Below are positions 2,476 through 58,123 of a stretch of 64,000 nt of DNA, in pieces. Location: assembly GCF_006345805.1 (NCBI RefSeq), contig NC_043000.1, positions 89,280,001 to 89,344,000 of the forward strand, written 5' to 3'. Both the position numbers and the translations under genes were made by a program. The first letter of the stretch is position 1. The number at the start of each line of letters is the position of its first letter. The notes under the pieces were generated by a model. It was not told the origin of the DNA, did not search any database, and was given only the letters and a program-made list of their open reading frames with translations. This stretch comes from Octopus sinensis (lineage: Eukaryota).

Positions 2476-2633
2476 CTTTAGGATCACTTGTAACTTTTCC
2501 TTTTCCTTTCTTGGGTTTACCATATTTTGGTATAATGGTATGAGTGGAATTGCACTCTGGAATAACACAGCATGGTTCGCCTGGGAAATCAACAAGTCGG
2601 CAATCATTGGGAAGGTCTTCAAAAATGGGGCAC
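2476..2633 (-). CDS. VWC-like repeat 3, C-terminal half plus Lys/Gly-rich linker (158 nt, phase 2-1)
   Basis: cttttctgtcag|G TGC CCC ATT TTT...CCT AAA G|gtgtgg. Encodes [27 protein letters not shown]. The donor is less certain; an alternative gtaatg 5 nt further would be phase 0. Confidence 0.88.

Positions 2634-58123: not shown

What the first reader, a model, noticed from the sequence alone, without database searches (positions are those of the whole stretch)
2476..58123. Hidden 56-kb gene encoding a tandem ShKT plus tandem 10-Cys VWC-like mosaic protein
Seen in sequence: 11 short exons, only two of them recognisable in the ORF track, splice into 361 stop-free codons with two six-Cys modules and three repeats of C-x(13-16)-W-x3-C-x(2-3)-C-x-C...C-x3-CP...C...CC...C. 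Established: the C..C..C..Cx3Cx2C pattern defines ShKT (sea anemone K+ channel toxin fold, also found in astacins, tyrosinases, peroxidases and nematode proteins), and the 10-Cys W..C..CxC..CP..CC pattern is VWC-like. Inference: a secreted, non-enzymatic ShKT-VWC scaffold of a poorly characterised molluscan family, possibly with a matrix, mucus, skin, sucker, egg or salivary role. I cannot say whether this architecture is already described.
Basis: partly seen in the sequence, partly recalled or inferred. Interest (0 to 1): 0.75.

Follow-up and report, generated by a model that had tools for sequence, protein, structure and literature searches.

The report
Annotated octopus VWA–ShKT–VWC matrix gene
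The scattered cysteine-rich exons are real, but they are the middle third of an octopus gene already annotated in RefSeq, encoding a large secreted matrix-type protein of unknown function with relatives across molluscs and a brachiopod.

Summary
On the minus strand between 58123 and 2476 there are 14 exons, not 11. All have AG/GT splice sites. They join into 1503 nt, and the translation is identical (500 of 500 residues) to residues 672-1171 of RefSeq XP_036358133.1, "uncharacterized protein LOC115210527 [Octopus sinensis]" (1577 aa).

The window encodes 3 ShKT and 4 VWC modules, in the order ShKT-ShKT-VWC-VWC-ShKT-VWC-VWC. It missed ShKT3 (24169-24041) and one VWC (14518-14407 plus 8759-8584).

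The rest of the protein lies outside the window. It has TSP1 and three VWA domains upstream (five VWA and a signal peptide in the O. vulgaris and O. bimaculoides orthologues). Downstream it has three more VWC and three more ShKT modules.

A neighbouring-accession paralogue keeps all 58 in-window cysteines at only 43% non-Cys identity. The same ShKT+VWC mosaic occurs in at least 56 retrieved proteins from gastropods, bivalves, cephalopods and Lingula. Their names are uninformative or misleading: "collagen VI/XII-like", "kielin/chordin-like", "mucin-like".

The most likely role is a secreted, non-enzymatic extracellular-matrix scaffold. Function is inferred, not shown. Interest is low to moderate.

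The parts
58097..58123 (-). Exon A, 27 nt, linker IPKDVKPK (residues 672-679); phase 1 at both ends
   Evidence: AG/GT sites; tblastn of XP_036358133.1
56137..56244 (-). Exon B, 108 nt, ShKT1 (six Cys, C-x3-C-x2-C end)
   Evidence: Regex hit; Pfam ShK 15.9 bits, below the 20.9 cutoff; identical to RefSeq
53466..53588 (-). Exon C, 123 nt, ShKT2
   Evidence: Pfam ShK 22.1 bits, above cutoff
46144..46167 (-). Micro-exon M1, 24 nt, linker GNKTIAKE with an N-glycosylation sequon
   Evidence: Found from the RefSeq protein; flanked by cag|...|gtaaga; conserved as GNRTIGDR in the paralogue
42140..42257 (-). Exon D, 118 nt, N-half of VWC1 (C1-C5); ends in phase 2
39098..39237 (-). Exon E, 140 nt, C-half of VWC1 (C6-C10) plus G/K-rich linker
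   Evidence: the RefSeq protein confirms the distal donor at 39098
36524..36638 (-). Exon F, 115 nt, N-half of VWC2
   Evidence: single-exon ORFs from other species' genomic contigs are 59-68% identical over this exon only
28544..28677 (-). Exon G, 134 nt, C-half of VWC2 plus linker
24041..24169 (-).
   Evidence: Pfam ShK 30.0 bits; AF2 model pLDDT 77.9, top fold hits ShK-type peptides
21163..21186 (-). Micro-exon M2, 24 nt, linker STAMTPLKG; absent from the O. vulgaris annotation
14407..14518 (-).
8584..8759 (-). Exon L, 176 nt, C-half of VWC3 (C6 followed by Ser, not Pro) plus long G/S/N-rich linker
5037..5151 (-). Exon I, 115 nt, N-half of VWC4
2476..2633 (-). Exon J, 158 nt, C-half of VWC4 plus K/G-rich linker; the gene continues beyond the window start

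Best explanation
The feature is the central 14-exon block (residues 672-1171) of an annotated Octopus sinensis gene, LOC115210527 / XP_036358133.1. The gene encodes a large, secreted, disulfide-rich, non-enzymatic extracellular protein. The full architecture is: signal peptide, VWA and TSP1 domains, then ShKT-ShKT-VWC-VWC-ShKT-VWC-VWC (all seven in the window), then VWC x3 and ShKT x3.

Shown: the exon structure, the identity to the RefSeq model, the domain types, conservation of the cysteine framework, and membership of a lophotrochozoan family with the same mosaic.

Inferred: the protein acts as a multivalent extracellular-matrix scaffold. The VWA domains keep the DxSxS metal-site motif and would bind matrix partners or mediate oligomerisation. 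The VWC array would provide protein-protein contacts, either oligomerisation or binding of BMP/TGF-beta-type ligands. The small ShKT knots would serve as rigid spacers or extra binding sites.

The block grew by tandem duplication of symmetric units. Each ShKT is one phase 1-1 exon. Each VWC is a two-exon unit split by a phase-2 intron at the same point (C5-x3 | C6).
For: - Exon structure: the 14-exon CDS, all AG/GT, translates to 500 of 500 identical residues of XP_036358133.1. tblastn finds no other exon of this gene in the window.
- Bivalve relative: 37% identity, colinear across all junctions with Potamilus KAK3591357, E=3e-102.
- Cysteine framework: the paralogue XP_029635428.1 keeps 58 of 58 Cys at 43% non-Cys identity, and also keeps both micro-exon linkers.
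- Domains: Pfam ShK and VWC on the modules. The full protein has TSP_1, 3 VWA, ShK and VWC, and no enzyme domain.
- VWC support: the VWC family profile hits the CCN3 VWC structure 5nb8 at E=1.3e-8, and 46 of 55 modules hit Pfam VWC.
- ShKT fold: the ShKT3 model's top six structural neighbours are ShK-type peptides.
- Family size: 554 proteins at E<=1e-3, and 56 of the retrieved proteins carry both module types.
- Secretion: signal peptides in the O. vulgaris and O. bimaculoides orthologues, and DxSxS in all three VWA domains.
- Matrix lead: multi-VWC 'kielin/chordin-like' proteins are the most abundant proteins of the Argonaut eggcase matrix, and occur in Lottia and Crassostrea shell matrices (bioRxiv 10.1101/2021.07.10.451900).
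Against: - No transcript, proteomic or tissue data for this locus could be reached here. The literature search by locus, RefSeq and UniProt identifiers found nothing.
- Individual VWC modules score below Pfam's gathering threshold, and ShKT1 does too.
- Orthology between this gene and the Argonaut or shell-matrix VWC proteins was not tested.
- The two annotation pipelines disagree on micro-exon M2, and the O. bimaculoides model garbles ShKT2. Isoform structure is therefore unsettled.
- VWC and ShKT domains have several known roles, so 'scaffold' is the default reading rather than a demonstrated one.
Confidence: 0.6

Rival explanations
1. The protein is mainly a signalling modulator. The seven-VWC array sequesters or presents BMP/TGF-beta-family ligands in the extracellular space, as the VWC (cysteine-rich) repeats of chordin, kielin, crossveinless-2/BMPER and CRIM1 do. 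The VWA domains would anchor it to the matrix.
For: The modules are VWC homologues, with CCN3 VWC as the closest solved structure. Automatic annotation names relatives 'kielin/chordin-like' and 'cysteine-rich motor neuron 1-like'.
Against: The full protein has no CHRD, VWD/TIL, IGFBP or transmembrane parts that define those regulators. Those names rest on the VWC repeat alone. From general knowledge, many VWC domains (for example in collagens and mucins) are not BMP binders. No binding residues were tested.
Confidence: 0.15
2. The protein is a precursor or carrier of bioactive ShKT modules that modulate ion channels or proteases. This would be a venom, saliva or defence role, as with ShKT domains in cnidarian toxins, CRISPs, MMP23 and gastropod salivary proteins.
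For: There are six ShKT modules per protein, and the fold resembles ShK-type peptides. ShKT proteins are salivary-gland components in the vampire snail, and one is reported from Hapalochlaena glands (PMC6409789).
Against: The ShKT modules are embedded between VWA and VWC modules, and no dibasic processing sites flanking them were looked for or seen. The family also occurs in filter-feeding bivalves, grazers and a brachiopod, which argues against a predation-specific role. Channel-blocking residues were not examined.
Confidence: 0.07
3. It is a component of a mineralised or hardened secreted structure (stylet, statolith, egg chorion or eggcase, beak or sucker lining). That would make it the octopus counterpart of the multi-VWC proteins found in mollusc shell and Argonaut eggcase matrices.
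For: The Argonaut eggcase and the Lottia and Crassostrea shell proteomes contain abundant multi-VWC proteins. The family is found in shell-bearing molluscs and Lingula. Gastropod and Lingula relatives have Pro/Thr-rich mucin-like linkers.
Against: Orthology to those matrix proteins is untested. The preprint describes them as having VWC domains only, without VWA or ShKT. No acidic or other mineral-binding low-complexity regions are evident in the in-window sequence.
Confidence: 0.15
4. The block is a decaying or non-functional duplicate, and its RefSeq model is merely a gene-finder artefact.
For: No transcript evidence was accessible here. The O. sinensis model lacks the N-terminal signal peptide region, which is annotated separately as XP_036358533.1.
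Against: All 14 exons are open, with canonical splice sites and compatible phases. 58 of 58 Cys are conserved against a paralogue at 43% background identity, and identity to the O. bimaculoides orthologue is 87-91%.
Confidence: 0.03

Closest known systems
RefSeq XP_036358133.1, uncharacterized protein LOC115210527 [Octopus sinensis]. Orthologues: O. vulgaris CAI9721274.1 ('collagen alpha-1(XII) chain-like') and O. bimaculoides XP_052823619.1.
   Same: The window's 14 exons translate to residues 672-1171 with 500 of 500 identity. O. vulgaris is 98% identical and O. bimaculoides 87% over this part.
   Different: Nothing differs for O. sinensis. The O. vulgaris model skips micro-exon M2, and the window has Gly where O. 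vulgaris has Ala in VWC4. The O. bimaculoides model has a garbled ShKT2.
Paralogue XP_029635428.1 / XP_036358134.1, 'collagen alpha-4(VI) chain-like' [Octopus sinensis] (O. vulgaris CAI9721272.1)
   Same: Same module order over the in-window part, all 58 Cys conserved, both linker micro-exons conserved, and VWA domains upstream.
   Different: Only 43-47% identical. It has six VWA domains and no TSP1 hit.
Molluscan and brachiopod VWC/ShKT mosaic proteins. Examples: Potamilus KAK3591357.1, Gigantopelta XP_041376878.1 (4135 aa, 31 VWC), Aplysia XP_012936938.2, Haliotis XP_048254904.1, Saccostrea 'kielin/chordin-like' XP_061186698.1, Lingula XP_013410815.1.
   Same: Same CCN-type VWC module with the conserved motif (Y-x-G, W-x-D-G-C, C-x-C, RCP, CC-x4-C), interleaved with ShKT modules and often with VWA and TSP1. 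The Potamilus protein is colinear with the window's ShKT-VWC-VWC-ShKT-VWC-VWC block.
   Different: Module numbers vary from 1 to 31. Gastropod and Lingula members have long Pro/Thr-rich mucin-like linkers, whereas octopus has short Gly/Lys-rich ones. Lingula adds a C-type lectin domain.
VWC domain of CCN3/NOV (PDB 5nb8) and other chordin-type VWC domains (collagen IIA 1u5m)
   Same: Ten-Cys framework with C-x3-C-x-C and CC-x4-C spacing. The profile match to 5nb8 is E=1.3e-8, and the N-terminal sub-domain also resembles fibronectin type I modules.
   Different: CCN proteins have a single VWC between IGFBP and TSP1/CT domains. Here the VWC is arrayed seven times, and each copy is split by a phase-2 intron.
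ShKT domains embedded in larger proteins: astacin-ShKT, CAP/CRISP-ShKT and multi-ShKT proteins of molluscs (PMC6409789)
   Same: Six-Cys ShKT modules, each on its own exon, repeated within one protein.
   Different: Those proteins pair ShKT with a protease or CAP domain. Here the partners are VWA, TSP1 and VWC, and no catalytic domain is present.

Membership tests
ShKT / ShK domain-like (Pfam PF01549) | Six cysteines with the terminal C-x3-C-x2-C spacing in a domain of about 35-40 residues | tested here: met
   Three minus-strand matches at 56242-56141, 53580-53476 and 24146-24042. None on other frames, and none in 200 shuffles.
ShKT / ShK domain-like (Pfam PF01549) | Score at or above the Pfam gathering threshold (20.9 bits) | tested here: met
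   ShKT3 scores 30.0 bits and ShKT2 22.1 bits, both over the full 37-position profile. ShKT1 scores only 15.9 bits.
ShKT / ShK domain-like (Pfam PF01549) | ShK fold (two short helices held by three disulfides) | tested here: inconclusive
   The AF2 model of ShKT3 has pLDDT 77.9 and two short helices. The six best Foldseek PDB matches are all ShK or ShKT peptides, with TM 0.45-0.64, but E is 0.3 or worse because the domain is tiny. Disulfide pairing was not examined.
ShKT / ShK domain-like (Pfam PF01549) | Channel-blocking functional residues of the toxin members | not tested
   Not needed for domain membership.
VWC / chordin-like cysteine-rich repeat (Pfam PF00093) | Ten cysteines, including the C2-xx(x)-C3-x-C4 and C8C9-x(2-4)-C10 motifs | tested here: met
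   All four in-window modules have ten Cys. VWC3 has C-x2-C-x-C and the others C-x3-C-x-C. All have CC-x4-C, the same spacing as CCN3 VWC in the PDB alignment.
VWC / chordin-like cysteine-rich repeat (Pfam PF00093) | Score at or above the Pfam gathering threshold (27.6 bits) | tested here: not met
   Single modules score 25.0, 21.2 and 21.3 bits (E 2e-5 to 4e-4), although they cover the whole profile. At family level, 46 of 55 modules hit VWC at E<0.01, and the family profile hits the CCN3 VWC structure at E=1.3e-8. Homology is therefore supported despite the sub-threshold single scores.
Collagen VI / XII (names given by automatic annotation) | Collagen triple-helix (Gly-X-Y) repeats; FN3 repeats for type XII | tested here: not met
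   The Pfam scan of the full O. sinensis and O. vulgaris proteins and the paralogue shows VWA, TSP_1, ShK and VWC only. The name rests on the VWA domains.
Chordin / kielin / BMPER / CRIM1 BMP regulators | CHRD domains (chordin), VWD plus TIL (kielin, BMPER), or IGFBP plus a transmembrane segment (CRIM1), alongside the VWC repeats | tested here: not met
   None of these is found in the full proteins. BMP binding cannot be tested with these tools.
Gel-forming mucins (names 'mucin-2-like' and 'mucin-19' given to relatives) | VWD-C8-TIL assemblies, long PTS regions and a cystine-knot C-terminus | tested here: not met
   No VWD, C8 or TIL hits in the octopus proteins. The octopus linkers are short and Gly/Lys-rich.
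Lophotrochozoan VWA/TSP1-ShKT-VWC mosaic family (unnamed) | Interleaved ShKT modules and CCN-type VWC modules in one polypeptide, colinear with relatives | tested here: met
   Colinear alignment with the Potamilus protein at E=3e-102. 56 retrieved proteins carry both module types. Taxa are gastropods, bivalves, cephalopods and Lingula.

The most novel reading that the evidence does not exclude
The VWA/TSP1-ShKT-VWC mosaics would form a distinct, so far undescribed, lophotrochozoan-wide family of extracellular-matrix proteins. The module array expands and contracts by exon-unit duplication, from 1 to 31 VWC modules. The family's members would include the abundant multi-VWC proteins of mollusc shell and Argonaut eggcase matrices. 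The octopus tandem pair would then be the soft-bodied lineage's version of a biomineral or egg-envelope scaffold, possibly one that also tethers BMP-type signals.
Probability: 0.25. Interest if true: 0.4.

Novelty: already known. Interest (0 to 1): 0.2.

Why it matters
For the scan, the lesson is mainly methodological. A tool-free reader can pick out a real, highly dispersed gene: 2.7% exonic over 56 kb, with exons of 24-176 nt. It still missed three module exons, and possibly the two 24-nt micro-exons (its own exon list is not known), and it could not know the gene was annotated.

Biologically, the locus belongs to a sizeable, functionally unstudied family of secreted mosaic proteins in molluscs and brachiopods. 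Their database names (collagen VI/XII-like, kielin/chordin-like, CRIM1-like, mucin-like, FRAS1-like) are all misleading. A proper description and expression map of the family would tidy annotation. It might also connect to shell or eggcase matrix biology. Nothing here is surprising at the level of mechanism.

Tried and rejected
- Word-indexed protein search with the spliced model returned nothing, although an identical protein is in that collection. This is a tool-sensitivity limit, so I did not repeat it.
I therefore queried with a profile of the three contiguous N-half VWC exons (A1), which found the family and the RefSeq protein.
- For the same reason, only a single-exon ShKT module could be modelled. 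No VWC structure was predicted.
- My first gene model (10 exons) and second (12 exons) were both incomplete. The second produced an unpaired 59th Cys at the H-K junction. The RefSeq protein revealed the two 24-nt micro-exons, which I then found in the window with canonical sites.
- Alternative donors for exons E (39116) and J (2521) were considered and rejected, because RefSeq uses 39098 and 2476.
- The Logan-derived cluster member P0167 was checked as possible transcript evidence. It is a single-exon VWA ORF from genomic reads.
- Literature searches by locus, RefSeq and UniProt identifiers, and by old annotation names, found nothing.
- Searches on ShKT+VWC co-occurrence gave only shell-proteome tables where the two domains are in different proteins.
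- Collagen, chordin/kielin/CRIM1 and mucin membership were considered and rejected on domain content.

Full report
**Observation**

The window is AT-rich (about 34% GC) and full of (TG)n-type microsatellites that create Cys-rich pseudo-ORFs. Among these, a set of genuine Cys-rich stop-free pieces lies colinearly on the minus strand.

Regular expressions were run over all six frames for the ShKT pattern and for the N- and C-halves of the 10-Cys module. They hit only the minus strand, 3, 4 and 3 times respectively. They hit zero times in 200 shuffles of the window. HMMs built from the exon classes recover exactly these pieces (E 1e-16 to 1e-23). Nothing else scores better than E about 0.2.

**Gene structure**

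Splice-site inspection gave a first model of 10 exons. After a fourth VWC-type module turned up at 14.5 kb and 8.7 kb, the model grew to 12 exons. Comparison with the best database relative (below) exposed two 24-nt micro-exons. Both are present in the window with canonical sites, at 46167-46144 and 21186-21163.

The final in-window structure has these properties:
- 14 exons of 24-176 nt, all with AG/GT sites.
- 1503 nt in total, which is 2.7% of the 55.6-kb span.
- Introns of 1.9-7.8 kb.
- Each ShKT module and each linker is one phase 1-1 exon.
- Each VWC is two exons split by a phase-2 intron at the same position (C5-x3 | C6).

This is the signature of growth by duplication of symmetric exon units. 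The module order in the window is ShKT1-ShKT2-VWC1-VWC2-ShKT3-VWC3-VWC4.

Its inventory of 11 exons, 361 codons, two ShKT and three VWC is not. It missed ShKT3 (24169-24041) and VWC3 (14518-14407 plus 8759-8584). Its C-to-W spacing of x13-16 is actually x12.

**Identity**

I therefore submitted a profile of the three contiguous N-half VWC exons (A1). It found 554 proteins at E<=1e-3.

One of them, P0008, is RefSeq XP_036358133.1, 'uncharacterized protein LOC115210527 [Octopus sinensis]', 1577 aa. The 14-exon translation equals its residues 672-1171, 500 of 500. tblastn finds no further exon of this gene elsewhere in the window, so the gene runs off both ends.

The window matches O. sinensis rather than the O. 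vulgaris model at the one distinguishing residue in VWC4. The gene is therefore annotated, not hidden.

**Whole protein**

A Pfam scan of the full protein shows TSP_1, three VWA domains (E=3e-141), ShK and VWC, and no enzymatic domain. The O. vulgaris orthologue (CAI9721274.1, 2007 aa) and the O. bimaculoides orthologue (XP_052823619.1, 2002 aa) add two more VWA domains, a second TSP1 and an N-terminal signal peptide. This means the O. sinensis model is N-terminally truncated.

Local HMMs count seven VWC and five ShKT modules in the protein. A sixth ShKT is visible by eye at the C-terminus. All three VWA domains keep DxSxS.

**Domain membership**

For ShKT:
- Pfam scores are 30.0, 22.1 and 15.9 bits against a cutoff of 20.9.
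- An AlphaFold model of ShKT3 has pLDDT 77.9.
- Its six nearest PDB folds are all ShK or ShKT peptides at TM 0.45-0.64, although E-values are weak for so small a domain.

For VWC:
- Single modules give full-length Pfam matches at 21-25 bits, just under the 27.6 cutoff.
- The closest solved structure is the CCN3/NOV VWC domain, which shares the C-x3-C-x-C and CC-x4-C spacing.
- A 55-module family profile raises that match to E=1.3e-8. It also picks up fibronectin type I modules and, weakly, collagen IIA VWC.
- 46 of 55 modules hit Pfam VWC.

The automatic names given to relatives fail their own defining features. These names are collagen VI/XII-like, kielin/chordin-like, CRIM1-like, FRAS1-like and mucin-like. 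The proteins have no triple helix, CHRD, VWD/TIL, IGFBP or transmembrane parts.

**Conservation and family**

The neighbouring-accession paralogue in the same genome (XP_029635428.1, 'collagen alpha-4(VI) chain-like') has the same module order over this segment. It conserves 58 of 58 cysteines and both micro-exon linkers, while only 43% of other residues are identical. That is strong evidence of selection on the disulfide framework.

A freshwater-mussel protein (Potamilus KAK3591357.1) aligns colinearly across ShKT2 to VWC4 at 37% identity, E=3e-102.

Among the retrieved proteins, 56 carry both module types. The named sources are:
- Gastropods: Gigantopelta (4135 aa, 31 VWC), Aplysia, Haliotis, Elysia, Plakobranchus, Batillaria, Pomacea, Physella.
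- Bivalves: Potamilus, Tegillarca, Mercenaria, Saccostrea, Mya, Mactra, Ruditapes, Solemya.
- Octopuses.
- The brachiopod Lingula.

Several family members come from long uninterrupted ORFs on short assembled contigs. One example is 1358 aa on a 4210-nt Logan contig. For intron-rich genes like this one, such contigs are most simply read as mRNA-derived. That would mean ShKT and VWC modules are co-transcribed in relatives. This is an inference, not a test of this locus.

**Function**

No paper in the searchable library mentions this locus or its orthologues by any identifier.

The only functional lead concerns multi-VWC 'kielin/chordin-like' proteins. They are the most abundant proteins of the Argonaut eggcase matrix, and they occur in Lottia and Crassostrea shell matrices (bioRxiv 10.1101/2021.07.10.451900). 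Orthology to this gene is untested.

My best reading is a secreted, non-enzymatic, multivalent matrix scaffold. Rival readings are:
- A BMP-ligand modulator.
- A biomineral or egg-envelope component.
- A carrier of bioactive ShKT modules.
- A pseudogene or annotation artefact, which is least likely.

Gene identity and architecture are essentially certain. The functional part is inference.

**Verdict**

This is a correct spot of a real, very dispersed gene, with the right domain calls. However, the exon and module count is incomplete, the locus is already annotated, and the domains are of ordinary kind. The family is unstudied and mis-named in databases, which gives it modest value. Interest is 0.2.

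Noticed in passing
window 25700-26161 (+) and 44309-44671 (-): Mariner/Mos1-type transposon relics inside introns of the gene. The first matches HTH_48 (E=2.4e-5) and the second matches the Transposase_1 DDE part (E=2e-16).
   Followed up: partly
window 29567-30322 (-) and 29370-29648 (-): A 252-aa stop-free stretch and an adjacent 93-aa one with no Pfam match. This is probably another transposable-element relic in the F-G intron.
   Followed up: partly
window 19535-19621 (-), 19719-19862 (-), 34289-34375 (+), 61984-62073 (-): Four copies of a short interspersed repeat. They translate alike ('[26 protein letters not shown]') and mimic a Cys-rich exon.
   Followed up: no
window ~23040-23163 (+) and ~55500-55625 (+): Two copies of another repeat ('[21 protein letters not shown]'), each next to a (TG)n tract.
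   Followed up: no
whole window, e.g. 10516-10799, 28862-29198, 31826-32020, 35996-36202, 36892-37139, 37676-38014: Abundant (TG/CA)n and (TATG)-type microsatellites translate as 'YVCMYVCM' or 'CVCVCV'. They dominate any naive cysteine-density scan.
   Followed up: no
window 21163-21186 (micro-exon M2) and 53466-53588 (ShKT2 exon): Octopus annotations disagree. O. vulgaris CAI9721274.1 joins exon H directly to exon K, skipping M2 and creating an unpaired extra Cys. O. bimaculoides XP_052823619.1 replaces most of ShKT2 by unrelated residues. O. sinensis XP_036358133.1 lacks the signal-peptide end, which is annotated separately as XP_036358533.1.
   Followed up: partly
tool behaviour: The word-indexed protein search returned no hit for a query that is identical over its whole length, apart from two 8-residue gaps, to a protein present in that collection. 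Negative results from that tool on Cys-rich mosaic proteins should not be trusted.
   Followed up: no
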